The translations under genes and the position numbers were made by a program. The notes under the pieces were generated by a model, which saw only the letters and a program-made list of their open reading frames with translations, searched no databases and was not told the origin of the DNA. This document shows, in pieces, positions 1 through 28,237 of a stretch of 64,000 nucleotides of DNA (its first letter is position 1; each line of letters begins with the position of its first letter). The stretch comes from Octopus vulgaris (Eukaryota): positions 24,800,001 to 24,864,000 of the forward strand of contig OX597832.1 in assembly GCA_951406725.2 (NCBI GenBank). The letters run 5' to 3'.

Positions 1-179
1 GAGAGTGCTGTATGAACATTTAATGTGGTTTTAGAGTCAAGTTTTGACTGCTATTTCCAGCGTGGTGGTGTCTCTTAGATACCTTAAATTATAATTTTAA
101 AATAATTATTACCTCTGAAAGGTTTTTATTCCCATGCTGGCCACCTGATAAGATCGGTATTTTAAATATAGATCTCAAT

Positions 180-232
<53 letters not shown>

Positions 233-10414: not shown

Positions 10415-10540
10415 GGATCATCATAACGAGGTTCTGTCACTGTAGCAATACTAATAAGCCATCATATGATAGTTGATGACAATGATGATGATAATGATAA
10501 TATATATATATGTATGCATGTCTATGTGTGCGTGTATCAG

Positions 10541-10602
10541 ACTTTGGCTGATGAGAAATCAGGCACCTTTTTGACGCTAAATTTCGAAACCGGTACCAGG
10601 TT
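10541..10602 (+). ncRNA. Minimal type-I hammerhead ribozyme, canonical core, palindromic stem III
   Basis: TTGG-CTGATGA-GAAAT(loop)ATTTC-GAAA-CCGG-T-A-CCAG: all conserved core bases present, stem I 4+ bp, stem II 5 bp with G10.1-C11.1, stem III ACCGGT; predicted cleavage after 10595. Confidence 0.75.
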
Positions 10603-11235
10603 GACCAGCATTTACTTGTTCTGACTCATTTGAGATAAGACATTATTATTGTTCACTGATATGTTTTCCTATCTTGTCTGTAATAGATTTGTGACTTTTC
10701 GGTGGTACAGAAGTATTTTTTGACTTCTATCATTAGCGATACAGGTACTCATATAGTACCCTTGTGTACATATCTAATATTGTATGTATATATTTTATTA
10801 ATTTGCCTTACGGCTGATAATTCGCTTATCACTTGTGATGGTATTTTAATAATAACATCCCTATATATATATATATATATATATAAAACCCAAACAATTC
10901 ACAAGATTCACCAGAACTATTCGAACAGACACCAACCAAAAGTCATCATAGTTGCTCCCATTGGAACACAAGGTAAAACCTAAAATGAATTCCTCGCTTT
11001 TTCAAGAACATGAATTTTTTATATTGAATGCATATCACCACTATGAACTACTACATCATACTCTTTAAACATAAAGCATGGACTCGCTTCACTATATATG
11101 AATTTTTTATTATATTTGTTTTTTTTGATTTTTCCAGTTTCAGCTAATGAGCTGTGGCCATGCTGGGGCACAGCCATTATATATGAATTTTTTATATTTG
11201 ATAGCATGAACTATCTTTTTTACATATAATTTTTT

Positions 11236-11272
11236 TTGATAAGGTTCGTCATTTCAAGAACCGAAACATGTT
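11236..11272 (+). ncRNA. Degenerate hammerhead-like motif
   Basis: TTGATAA-GGTTC(loop)GAACC-GAAACATGT-T; 5-bp stem II and ACATGT palindrome kept, C3 and G8 mutated. Confidence 0.5.
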
Positions 11273-11377
11273 ATATAAATAATGTATATATAAAAATTAA
11301 AAATTTGTCTAATATAGCAGCATTTTCAAACTTCATTTTTTACAAATATATACCCACTCGTATACGAGCTAATCTTA

Positions 11378-11458
<81 letters not shown>

Positions 11459-25359: not shown

Positions 25360-25449
25360 GTGAGCCGAATGTAAAGAAGGAAAGGAAAACTTAGACTTGG
25401 ATTTTTGGTCCTGGAAAGTTATTGTTTGCTCTAAATACTAAATGACAGA

Positions 25450-26212
25450 TACACACACACCTGCAAGCACACACACACACCTGCAAGCACACACACACCT
25501 GCAATAACACACACGTCTGCAAGCACACACACACATGCAAGAACACACACATCTGCAAGAACACACACACACCTGCAAGCACACACACAAACCTGCAAGA
25601 ACACCCATACACCTGCAAGAACACACACACACCTGCAAGAACACAGACACCTGCAAGAACACACACGCCTGCAAGCACACACACACCTGCAAGAATACAC
25701 ACGCCTGTAAGCACACACACACCTGCAAGCACACACACACCTGCAAGAACACACACACCTGCAAGAACACACACATCTGCAAGAACACACACATCTGCAA
25801 GAACACACACACACCTGCAAGCACACACACAAACCTGCAAGAACACCCACACACCTGCAAGAACACACACACACCTGCAAGAATACACACGCCTGTAAGC
25901 ACACACACACCTGCAAGAACACACACATCTGCAATAACACACACACACCTGCAAGCACACACACACACCTGCAAGCACACACACACCTGCAAGCACACAC
26001 ACACTCCTGCGAGCACACACACACCTGCAAGCACACACACACACCTGCAAGAACACGCACACCTGCAAGAACACACACACACACCTGCAAGAACACACAC
26101 ACGCCTGCAAGAACACACACACACCTGCAAGAACACGCACACACCTGCAAGAACATACACACACACCTGCAAGAACACACGCACCTGCAAGAACACACAC
26201 ACCTGCAAGCAC
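25450..26212. repeat. Minisatellite, unit (CA)n-CCTGCAAG(A/C), about 17-21 bp, roughly 40 copies
   Basis: Direct reading; variant units (CCTGTAAG, TCTGCAAT, ATCTGCAAG) recur. Confidence 0.95.
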
Positions 26213-26428
26213 AGACTCACACACACGCACACACACACACATACACACACACACACGCACACACACACGCGTGCGTTTATAGTGTGATGGTTTTGTATGT
26301 CTTCTATATTTTAAAAAAGAAAACATCAACTTCTACGCTGCTTATGACAGCCGTCCATTCAGAACTGCTCTCGCCCACACGTTCCGTTGCTATCTCGTTA
26401 AAGCGATCGGAAATTAGTTTCCTTCTAG

Positions 26429-26491
26429 GTTACTGACGACAGATTCCATATTACACACATCCTAAGAACTCTGGTTCTGCTCAAATGTTAG
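26429..26491 (+). CDS. Candidate terminal exon (VTDDRFHITHILRTLVLLKC*)
   Basis: Acceptor TTTCCTTCTAG; in phase 0 with 25204-25359. Confidence 0.2.
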   Translation, partial: VTDDRFHITHILRTLVLLKC

Positions 26492-27417: not shown

Positions 27418-28090
27418 TTTGATAATTCCTGGATATCGCTAGGGACATAGTGATCTCTGGTTTATAATTGTTTGTTAATTAGTTTTCCACTGTATATAGT
27501 TGATTAACTTGAAGTATATTAGTAATTGATAAACTATTAATTCTCTTTTCACATTATAAAAAGATCTGAGCAATATTTTTTTATCCATCCGTCCATCCAC
27601 CCATTCACCCAACCATCCATTTACTTCCCCCACCATTCCTGAGAGGGCCGGTAGGGGTAGAAACCCCAGGTCAATTTCTGATGGGACCCGCCATTAGGTT
27701 CTATCAGACCCAACCATAATTATACTTTTCCGCTGGATTCCAAAGCATGACGAACAAACAGTATGGATATTACTTGACCATCTCGTTGTTTGTCTCCCTC
27801 AGATCTCCTACCATTTCACTCTTCTTATAGAATCCGTCTTGCGATTTTCCCGGTCACATTTTAATTACATGTCTGTCGCTATGAGCATTTCAATAAATTG
27901 CAAGATTTCAGAAACAGAAATATAGCAAATCCAGGAGTATTTCTTATGCCAAATTCATTATTGTATAACATATTTATCATCTCAAAGGAGTACTTGTCTG
28001 TCTAGTGATTTGATCTAAGACTGAGTTTTGAAACCAACTTCCACCACGGAATATTTATTTCACAACCTAAAAACATATAAATTCAGTTAA

Positions 28091-28237
28091 ATTCAGATTT
28101 CACTTCAGATATCAAACGTTTCGTCATGACCCTGCGACCTGGTCACTCAGCCAAAGTCCTACTGAGTCAGTGACATAGCCACAGTGGTGCGACGAAACCT
28201 TTGACACCTTAAAATATAAATGAAAAGTGAATTGAAT
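28091..28237. repeat. Fold-back of two Penelope-like termini with hammerhead-like half cores on both strands
   Basis: Both strands read CTGAGT...GAC-GAAAC.TTTGA; arms also share ATTCA..TTCACTT. Confidence 0.6.

What the first reader, a model, noticed from the sequence alone, without database searches (positions are those of the whole stretch)
10541..10602. Fully canonical solitary hammerhead ribozyme
Every conserved core position is present (CUGAUGA, GAAA, U16.1-A17), with a G-C-closed 5-bp stem II, a 4-7-bp stem I and the self-complementary stem III ACCGGU. It is the best candidate in the window for an active self-cleaving RNA. By analogy with PLE hammerheads it should need a partner copy (dimer) for efficient cleavage.
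Basis: partly seen in the sequence, partly recalled or inferred. Interest (0 to 1): 0.75.

Follow-up and report, generated by a model that had tools for sequence, protein, structure and literature searches.

The report
Truncated hammerhead copy in a retroelement
The hammerhead-ribozyme motif is real, but it is one worn, 5'-truncated copy of a roughly 240-copy, 444-bp non-coding mobile repeat of a known type (retrozyme / Penelope-like), so this copy is probably inactive.

Summary
The motif at 10541-10602 is exactly as described: CUGAUGA, GAAA, ACCGGU and GUA with cleavage predicted at 10595/10596. A descriptor of this kind is expected 0.013 times per shuffled window.

It is not solitary. It is the 5' end of a dispersed repeat (window 10538-10885) ending in a hairpin plus (TA)n. 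The genome holds 125 exact and 236 near-exact copies of its hammerhead 3' half.

The repeat unit is 444-446 bp, non-coding and 35% GC. Insertions reach about 1.65 units, sit in (TA)n, have variable 5' ends and often carry direct or inverted partial copies upstream. This is the insertion signature of Penelope-like elements.

Full-length copies encode a much better type I hammerhead: a two-part helix I (5 + 5 bp), a two-part helix II (5 + 6 bp), and a helix III of one pair capped by the palindromic loop CCGG. The fold z-score is -3.9.

The window copy lacks the 5' arm of distal helix I and has two mismatches in distal helix II. It pairs 16 of 22 stem positions and scores 77 bits against 94-106 for full copies. 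No partner hammerhead lies nearby.

Verdict: a decaying copy of a hammerhead-bearing, retrozyme-like non-autonomous retroelement, and a new member of a known kind. The autonomous partner was not found, and cleavage is untested.

The parts
10538..10861 (+). 5'-truncated copy of the 444-446-bp hammerhead-bearing repeat: hammerhead, body and 3' hairpin
   Evidence: Genome matches begin at window 10538-10541 and run to about 10885. The copy is 96.6% identical to the consensus of 20 other copies. BLAST to the L041 copy covers 10540-10879.
10541..10547 (+). Helix I, proximal 5' arm (ACUUUGG)
   Evidence: The consensus continues upstream with GCUGGCGG, which is absent here.
10548..10554 (+). Core box CUGAUGA (C3-A9)
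   Evidence: The box is intact in 52 of 63 full-length family copies.
10555..10585 (+). Helix II: proximal GAAAU/AUUUC (5 bp), a 2x2 internal loop, and distal GGCACC/GACGCU, which has 2 mismatches here against 6 bp in the majority consensus
10586..10595 (+). GAAA, then helix III (A15.1-U16.1 capped by the palindromic loop CCGG), then A17. Predicted cleavage is 3' of 10595.
   Evidence: These columns are invariant in A2, though 80 of its 101 rows were chosen by this very 21-mer.
10596..10609 (+). Helix I 3' arm: proximal CCAGGUU, internal loop GA, and distal CCAGC, which has no partner in this copy
10837..10861 (+). 3'-terminal hairpin GAUGGUA-loop-UA(A)CAUC followed by CC, the fixed 3' end of insertions. 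The consensus 3' arm is UACCAUC; the window copy has one mismatch at 10855.
10862..10885 (+). (TA)12 tail / target microsatellite
   Evidence: Nearly all copies end in (TA)n.
10500..10537 (+). 5' flank: TA/TG-type microsatellite (target side)

Best explanation
Window 10538-10885 is a 5'-truncated, slightly decayed insertion of a short, non-coding retroelement with a 444-446-bp unit. Each unit carries one type I hammerhead ribozyme.

Shown:
- The family exists, with about 240 hammerhead-bearing copies that are 94-98% identical to the consensus.
- The unit runs hammerhead, about 290-nt body, terminal hairpin, CC(TA)n. In insertions longer than one unit, the sequence continues through a linker of about 110 nt into the next hammerhead.
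- 3' ends are fixed. 5' ends vary, often with direct or inverted partial copies. Copies lie in (TA)n.
- Full copies encode a complete hammerhead with two-part helices I and II and a one-pair helix III capped by a palindromic tetraloop.

Inferred:
- The element is copied by target-primed reverse transcription, most likely by the RT-GIY-YIG protein of one of the genome's abundant Penelope-like elements. Priming would be on nicked (TA)n DNA, next to the terminal hairpin.
- Templates longer than one unit come from multimeric or read-through transcripts, or from circularised monomers.
- In such transcripts two hammerheads pair through ACCGGU/ACCGGU into a double hammerhead and cut after GUA. That releases 444-nt monomers that a tRNA ligase could circularise, which is the retrozyme pathway.

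The window copy lacks half of distal helix I, has a damaged distal helix II and has no partner in cis. It is most likely catalytically dead or very weak, and has no function of its own.
For: Family and boundaries.

Unit and tandem junctions. In L041 two hammerheads lie 444 bp apart.

Non-coding and low GC: the longest open frame is 66 aa or less even when read around the unit, and GC is 34.9%. There is no tRNA-like head.

Consensus hammerhead fold: MFE -31.3 kcal/mol, z = -3.90, 0 of 200 shuffles as good, and the MFE keeps helices I and II.

Pairing in 63 full-length copies:
- 91.7% of pair cells are paired.
- Helix I pair 13-66 appears as UA 42 / UG 13 / CG 6.
- The covariation score is 0.100 against 0.091 in shuffles (3 of 500 shuffles reach it).
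- 32 of 63 copies keep the core, helix I and proximal helix II intact.

Window copy damage: 16 of 22 stem pairs, 76.9 bits against 94-106 on a family covariance model, and the energies.

Dimer helix III: -10.3 kcal/mol as an isolated duplex, and present in the cofold MFE.

PLE context:
- At least 150 scored GIY-YIG hits out of 5955 candidates, at least 16 with an intact 781-aa RT+EN frame.
- The 3' end of that PLE also stops at (TA)n.
- A fragment of that PLE family lies directly 3' of the element in the window.

Literature:
- PLE partial tandems, inverted 5' copies, (TA)n targets and hammerheads in pLTRs (PMC8557442).
- Palindromic helix III and dimer cleavage (PMC4209133; PMC7229834).
- Internal RT initiation and AT-rich target cleavage (PMC11167929).
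- Animal retrozymes proposed as non-autonomous PLE derivatives (bioRxiv 10.64898/2026.07.22.740005).
Against: - No Rfam hammerhead model scores the family, even for full-length copies.
- Covariation is weak, as expected for a family only about 3-4% diverged, and partly reflects subfamily structure.
- The commonest subfamily carries an A.C mismatch in distal helix II (33-43 unpaired in 31 of 62 distinct copies). That helix is therefore not strictly needed.
- Nearest-neighbour folding favours an alternative pairing that involves the core in monomers, and a CUGAU/AUCAG hairpin in the dimer.
- No autonomous partner was found. The 781-aa PLE's 3' region is unrelated. None of 12 GIY-YIG loci carries this hammerhead or the terminal motif.
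- No insertion starts at the cleavage site, so the genome gives no footprint of cleavage in vivo.
- Arrays of two or more full units are rare: one direct pair among the first 100 places listed.
- Cleavage, transcription and circular RNA could not be tested.
Confidence: 0.78

Rival explanations
1. A free-standing, active hammerhead ribozyme at this locus. It would process a local transcript, perhaps as a dimer with another copy.
For: All core positions and the proximal helices are present. The motif is far from chance for one window.
Against: It is a copy of a transposable element with a (TA)n tail and a truncated 5' end. Distal helix I is lost and distal helix II is damaged. The MFE fold is not hammerhead-like, with z = -0.06. 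No second ACCGGU hammerhead lies in the 64-kb window. The neighbouring hammerhead-like motif has the palindrome ACAUGU, which cannot pair with ACCGGU. No coding exon is nearby.
Confidence: 0.07
2. The hammerhead-like sequence of the family is a chance or vestigial resemblance with no catalytic role. The repeat is an ordinary SINE-like element mobilised by a LINE. The conserved stretch would serve as a promoter or RT-recognition signal; TTCGAAACC resembles a Pol III B box.
For: Rfam models do not match. Core columns are not clearly more conserved than their neighbours among copies (2.7% against 5.1% non-majority bases). No cleavage-site 5' ends were found. 5' truncation and inversions also occur with LINEs. 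The B-box resemblance is visible in the sequence.
Against: The consensus meets every core position. It also has two long helices in the right places and the palindromic helix III typical of metazoan type I hammerheads, with z = -3.9. Helix I changes keep pairing along the path U-A, U-G, C-G. No tRNA-like or other small-RNA head is present. Equal decay of the core in dead copies is expected under neutrality and says nothing about master copies. The same genome holds other canonical hammerheads near (TA)n ends and near PLE ORFs.
Confidence: 0.1
3. The repeat is not a separate non-autonomous element but the pseudo-LTR of an autonomous Penelope-like element. Its ORF-bearing copies were not sampled, and most genomic copies would be 5'-truncated or solo pLTR-like remnants.
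For: Hammerheads of PLEs lie in pLTRs, and most genomic PLE hammerheads are isolated remnants (PMC4209133). The insertion style is PLE-like.
Against: Where more than one unit is present, the next unit follows directly after 444-446 bp with no ORF between. The longest frame is 66 aa or less. None of 12 PLE ORF loci carries the hammerhead or the end motif.
Confidence: 0.05

Closest known systems
Animal non-LTR retrozymes (Cervera & de la Pena 2020, PMC7229834). Examples are the axolotl HHR_Amex1 repeats and newt satellite 2.
   Same: Short (about 170-450 bp), AT-rich, non-coding repeat with one type I hammerhead per unit. Helix III is a single pair capped by a palindromic tetraloop, which implies dimeric cleavage. 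Units can follow one another head to tail.
   Different: Here insertions are mostly no more than 1.65 units, not long arrays. They have a fixed 3' end at a hairpin plus (TA)n. Helix II is long and two-part (5 + 6 bp), and helix I is two-part. Circular RNA and cleavage are untested.
Minimal hammerheads in the pLTRs of Penelope-like elements (Cervera & de la Pena 2014, PMC4209133; Craig et al. 2021, PMC8557442)
   Same: Palindromic, minimal helix III. Partial-tandem and inverted 5' copies. (TA)n target preference. Mostly isolated, truncated copies in the genome.
   Different: The unit has no RT/GIY-YIG ORF. Helices I and II are long rather than minimal. The core is the canonical C3-G8, whereas the PLE tails seen in this genome (L051, L012, window 11236-11272) show the U3-A8 variant. 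No sequence similarity to the sampled PLE was found.
Schistosoma Sm-alpha SINE-like hammerhead repeat (Rfam Hammerhead_1, RF00163)
   Same: A dispersed short retroposon carrying a type I hammerhead with an internal loop in helix I.
   Different: RF00163 does not score this family. No tRNA-like Pol III head was detected. That Sm-alpha has such a head is from memory, not checked here.

Membership tests
Hammerhead ribozyme, type I | Conserved core: C3 U4 G5 A6 N7 G8 A9, G12 A13 A14, A15.1-U16.1, H17 | tested here: met
   Window 10548-10554, 10586-10589 and 10594-10595. The family consensus is identical.
Hammerhead ribozyme, type I | Three helices around the core, with helices II and III closed and helix I open | tested here: met
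   Helices I and II are present, in full in the consensus and only in their proximal parts in the window copy. Helix III is 1 bp plus the CCGG loop, the minimal metazoan form.
Hammerhead ribozyme, type I | Score at or above the Rfam gathering threshold (RF00163 or other hammerhead models) | tested here: not met
   No hammerhead hit at gathering score or at E<=10 for the window copy or a full-length copy. RF00163 does find other hammerheads in this genome. The 31-nt helix II is the likely cause; this is an inference.
Hammerhead ribozyme, type I | Base-pair covariation supporting the helices | tested here: inconclusive
   91.7% of cells are paired. The covariation score is 0.100 against 0.091 (3 of 500 shuffles). 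Four pairs change on both sides against 3.8 in shuffles. The family is young and its copies are related.
Hammerhead ribozyme, type I | Mg2+-dependent self-cleavage 3' of H17 | not testable with these tools
   Needs transcription and cleavage assays. No genomic footprint of cleavage-site ends was found.
Non-LTR retrozyme | Short, non-coding, AT-rich unit with one type I hammerhead | tested here: met
   Unit of 444 bp, GC 34.9%, longest frame 66 aa or less. One hammerhead per unit.
Non-LTR retrozyme | Head-to-tail tandem repeats, from dimers to multimers | tested here: inconclusive
   Partial dimers are common. One locus has two hammerheads 444 bp apart among the first 100 places listed. No longer array was seen.
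Non-LTR retrozyme | Expression as linear and circular monomer RNA | not testable with these tools
   No transcriptome is available here.
Penelope-like element (autonomous) | ORF with RT and GIY-YIG endonuclease between pLTRs | tested here: not met
   No ORF lies in or between units. The PLE ORF loci sampled lack this hammerhead and end motif.
Penelope-like element insertion signature (used as evidence for the mobilising machinery) | Partial tandem or inverted 5'-truncated copies, microsatellite (TA)n target, fixed 3' end | tested here: met
   The definition is from PMC8557442 and PMC11167929.
tRNA-derived SINE | tRNA-like 5' head with Pol III A and B boxes | tested here: not met
   ARAGORN finds nothing in three loci holding full units. 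There are no tRNA, 5S or 7SL Rfam hits. Only a B-box-like TTCGAAACC, which is part of the hammerhead core.

The most novel reading that the evidence does not exclude
The family is a young retrozyme-like element, about 3-4% diverged and possibly still mobile. It lies in a lineage where hammerhead retroelements have not been described; from its size, chromosome number and composition the 2.8-Gb, AT-rich genome looks cephalopod-like, which is unverified. Its type I hammerhead has an unusually long, two-part helix II and a two-part helix I, and escapes the Rfam models. It would cut as a double hammerhead and yield 444-nt circular RNAs copied by a Penelope-like RT that starts at the terminal hairpin.
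Probability: 0.35. Interest if true: 0.5.

Novelty: new member of a known kind. Interest (0 to 1): 0.33.

Why it matters
The work shows that a perfect-looking isolated hammerhead is a relic of a transposable element, and that the functional unit has to be read from the family rather than from one locus.

If the family's ribozyme is active, it adds a hammerhead-bearing, retrozyme-like element with an atypical helix II to the known range. It would tie that element to (TA)n-targeting Penelope-type insertion. It would also flag a class of hammerheads that the standard Rfam models miss.

None of this changes the current understanding of hammerheads or retrozymes.

Tried and rejected
- Rfam on the whole window, on 460 nt around the motif and on a full-length copy gave no hammerhead. 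I put this down to the long helix II rather than to absence of the fold.
- tRNA or SINE head: none.
- Coding potential of the unit and of the window: none.
- Autonomous partner, tested three ways. I compared the unit with the 3' region of the abundant 781-aa PLE and found no similarity. I looked for CUGAUGA..GAAAC and for the terminal motif TACCATCCCTATAT in 12 GIY-YIG loci and found none. I searched those loci with a family covariance model and found only an unrelated hammerhead in L053.
- Footprint of in vivo cleavage, meaning insertions that start at C1.1: 0 of 178 copies by pattern, and none among 20 inspected copies.
- Selection on the core among copies: 2.7% against 5.1% non-majority bases, too little to claim.
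- Species identity could not be established. No tool names G000 and the window has no usable gene. 'Cephalopod-like' rests only on genome size, about 30 large contigs, composition, and a paper on octopus repeats that mentions PLEs but no ribozymes.
- No cross-species comparison was possible, because the public collections on hand are prokaryotic, viral or metagenomic.

Full report
**1. The observation**

The sequence at 10541-10602 reads ACUUUGG-CUGAUGA-GAAAU-(21 nt)-AUUUC-GAAA-CCGG-U-A-CCAGGUU. Every core position of a hammerhead is present. Helix II is closed by G10.1-C11.1. Helix I has five contiguous pairs, two of them G-U, then a mismatch and an A-U pair. Helix III is the single pair A15.1-U16.1 around the loop CCGG, which gives the palindrome ACCGGU.

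A descriptor I wrote finds this as the only canonical-core match on either strand of the window. It requires CUGANGA, helix II of at least 4 bp, GAAA, 2-12 nt, U, H and helix I of at least 4 bp. In 300 dinucleotide-preserving shuffles of the window it matches 0.013 times per window. With both helices at least 5 bp it matches 0 times in 300.

Two results go the other way:
- No Rfam hammerhead model matches at gathering score over the window, or at E<=10 over 460 nt.
- The 62-nt stretch folds no better than its shuffles (MFE -10.8 kcal/mol, z = -0.06), and the fold is not hammerhead-like.

**2. It is not solitary**

The window lies in a 2.8-Gb genome of 227 contigs. A 120-nt query around the motif finds 43 matches at 91-96% identity, all starting at window 10538-10541. 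A 1200-nt query shows that the repeat covers window 10540-10885, and many loci carry a second, partial copy just upstream, either direct or inverted. The 21-mer CTAAATTTCGAAACCGGTACC, which is the hammerhead 3' half, occurs 125 times exactly and 236 times with up to two mismatches. The reversed control occurs 0 and 2 times.

**3. Anatomy of the family**

Aligning the window copy with 20 others shows that the window copy is 5'-truncated. The consensus continues upstream as ...GAGAATGTTAGTAGTTATTTAGCTGGCGG|ACTTTGG.... Copies end at ...GATGGTATTTTAATAATACCATCCC(TA)n, that is, a 7-bp hairpin, CC, then a TA microsatellite.

In loci with more than one unit, the sequence after CCATCCCTATAT runs through a linker of about 110 nt into the next hammerhead (L025 and L039). 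One locus, L041, has two hammerheads 444 bp apart, about 1.65 units in all.

Other properties of the unit:
- It is 444 bp with 34.9% GC, and has no open frame above 66 aa even when read around the unit.
- It has no tRNA-like head.
- 5' ends vary. Some are plain truncations next to (TA)n or (TG)n, and some carry inverted snap-back pieces.
- Copies are 94-98% identical to the consensus. The window copy is 96.6% identical, with 11 substitutions and 9 gap columns.

**4. The family hammerhead**

The majority consensus is GCUGGCGGACUUUGG-CUGAUGA-GAAAU-CA-GGCGCC-UAUUU-GGCGCU-AA-AUUUC-GAAA-CCGG-U-A-CCAGGUU-GA-CCAGC. Its features are:
- a two-part helix I: 5 bp plus A-U proximal, an internal loop, then 5 bp distal (GCUGG/CCAGC);
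- a two-part helix II: 5 bp, a 2x2 loop, then 6 bp;
- the minimal palindromic helix III.

It folds at -31.3 kcal/mol with z = -3.90, and 0 of 200 shuffles do as well. The MFE keeps helices I and II.

In 63 full-length, indel-free copies (A3), 91.7% of pair cells are paired. Variation in proximal helix I follows the path U-A, U-G, C-G (pair 13-66: UA 42, UG 13, CG 6). The covariation score is slightly above shuffles (0.100 against 0.091, reached by 3 of 500 shuffles), but pairs with changes on both sides are not in excess (4 against 3.8). This is weak support, as expected for a family this young.

The commonest subfamily has an A.C mismatch in distal helix II, so that helix is dispensable for amplification. 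CUGAUGA is intact in 52 of 63 copies. The core, helix I and proximal helix II are all intact in 32 of 63. Core columns are not clearly better kept than their neighbours (2.7% against 5.1% non-majority bases), which is consistent with neutral decay after insertion.

Rfam still does not score a full-length copy. RF00163 does find other hammerheads in this genome: 8 at or above the gathering score, some with helix II inserts that bring the match to about 108 nt. The long helix II is the likely reason for the miss; this is an inference.

**5. The window copy**

Compared with full copies, the window copy:
- lacks the 5' arm of distal helix I (upstream it reads GUGUAUCAG in place of GCUGGCGG);
- has GGCACC/GACGCU in distal helix II, which gives two mismatches;
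- pairs 16 of 22 stem positions, against 18-22 in full copies;
- has a native hammerhead secondary structure of +2.9 kcal/mol against an MFE of -15.3, where full-length subfamily types give -12.7 to -15.4 and keep both helices in the MFE;
- scores 76.9 bits on a covariance model built from A3, where full copies score 94-106.

The window holds no second copy of the family and no other canonical hammerhead.

**6. How it most likely works**

Published work bears on this architecture:
- Metazoan type I hammerheads with helix III of 1-2 bp capped by a palindromic loop cleave poorly alone and well as double hammerheads in tandem transcripts (PMC4209133; PMC7229834).
- Such hammerheads sit in non-LTR retrozymes that give circular RNAs after cleavage and ligation by a tRNA ligase.
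- Penelope-like elements insert as partial tandems, often with an inverted 5'-truncated copy. They prefer (TA)n in some clades and carry hammerheads in their pLTRs (PMC8557442).
- A PLE protein cleaves AT-rich DNA and starts reverse transcription at an internal stem-loop. Hammerhead cleavage was not needed for insertion in vitro (PMC11167929).
- A 2026 preprint argues that animal retrozymes are non-autonomous PLE derivatives.

The family matches this picture in its unit, its helix III, its insertion architecture and its (TA)n sites. The palindrome gives a 6-bp intermolecular helix of -10.3 kcal/mol that appears in the cofold MFE.

The genome holds very many PLE copies: 5955 GIY-YIG candidates, of which 150 were scored, and at least 16 have an intact 781-aa RT+EN frame. 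That PLE also ends at (TA)n.

I therefore infer mobilisation by a PLE-type RT primed on (TA)n next to the terminal hairpin, and ribozyme processing of multimeric transcripts. These steps are inferred, not shown.

**7. What speaks against or remains open**

- The partner was not identified.
- No insertion begins at the cleavage site. None of 178 copies has an A/T-only hexamer in front of C1.1. About ten of 20 further copies are truncated inside the hammerhead at scattered positions, and none at C1.1. The templates that were inserted therefore carried an uncut or religated hammerhead.
- Long arrays were not seen.
- A LINE partner cannot be excluded.
- Activity, transcription and circular RNA are untested.

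**8. Comparison and verdict**

The element works like an animal non-LTR retrozyme or a PLE-associated hammerhead repeat. It meets the sequence-level criteria for a type I hammerhead and for a retrozyme unit. It fails the Rfam score and is not an autonomous PLE.

It is a new member of a known kind. The specific locus flagged is a decaying, truncated copy with no evident function.

Confidence is 0.78 for the overall reading. By step:
- about 0.65 that intact family hammerheads cleave, at least as dimers;
- about 0.6 for a PLE partner;
- about 0.85 that the window copy is inactive as a monomer.

Noticed in passing
window 10884-11352 (+), with (TA)n at about 11386-11450: Directly 3' of the element's (TA)12 tail lies a 5'-truncated copy of the 3' (pLTR-like) region of an abundant Penelope-like element. 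It is 76-85% identical to the region downstream of a 781-aa RT+GIY-YIG ORF in L051, and it also ends in (TA)n.
   Followed up: partly
window 11236-11272 (+): A second hammerhead-like motif lies inside that PLE fragment. It has the U3-A8 core variant: UUGAUAA, GGUUC-10 nt-GAACC, GAAA, the palindrome ACAUGU, then U. Helix II is 5 bp but helix I is only 1 contiguous pair. L051 carries the same motif with a G.U pair at 10.1-11.1. Not validated as a ribozyme.
   Followed up: partly
G000 genome-wide, e.g. L051 (C16:20838796) and L056: The genome has a very abundant PLE family. There are 5955 GIY-YIG candidates, of which 150 were scored, all above the Pfam cut-off. At least 16 have exactly a 781-aa open frame (RT, a CX2-5CxxC linker, and GIY-YIG), which suggests recent activity.
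   Followed up: partly
L013:1501-1608, L012:1501-1608(-), L016, L053:451-536(+) and 127-212(-): Other canonical type I hammerhead families occur in the same genome. They have about 50-70 nt inserted in helix II, and helix III of 2 bp capped by the palindromic loop GAUC. The L053 pair is inverted, lies about 35 nt from a (TA)n end and is within 1.5 kb of a GIY-YIG ORF.
   Followed up: partly
L012:1221-1260(-) and L018:1501-1600: Minimal hammerhead-like motifs sit next to (TA)n. One is UUGAAAA-AGUC-UCAAU-GACU-GAAACCGGUA. The other is an inverted pair of about 42-nt motifs. They look like PLE tails from other families.
   Followed up: no
L065, L082, L130, L141 (5' junctions of family copies): Some copies have palindromic snap-back junctions, in which an inverted piece of the hammerhead region is joined to the direct copy. 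This suggests template switching or hairpin priming at second-strand synthesis.
   Followed up: no
window 28083-28165 (-): A weak match to the family covariance model (13 bits, E about 0.7). It shares ACTTTGGCTGA and CGAAAC with the family, but its core has an extra base (CUGAGUGA) and positions 10.1/11.1 cannot pair. It is not a hammerhead as it stands.
   Followed up: partly
window 25391-26436 (both strands) and throughout: The window has no convincing coding ORF and is packed with microsatellites such as (TA)n, (CA)n and (ATAG)n. At about 25.4-26.4 kb, long open frames with repeated peptides on both strands and a strong GC skew (-0.23) indicate a degenerate tandem repeat.
   Followed up: no
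L025:760-822 (-): A sub-threshold Rfam match to TeloSII_ncR33 (15.4 bits, gathering score 105). It rests on the reverse complement of UUUGGCUGAUGAGAA and is almost certainly chance.
   Followed up: no
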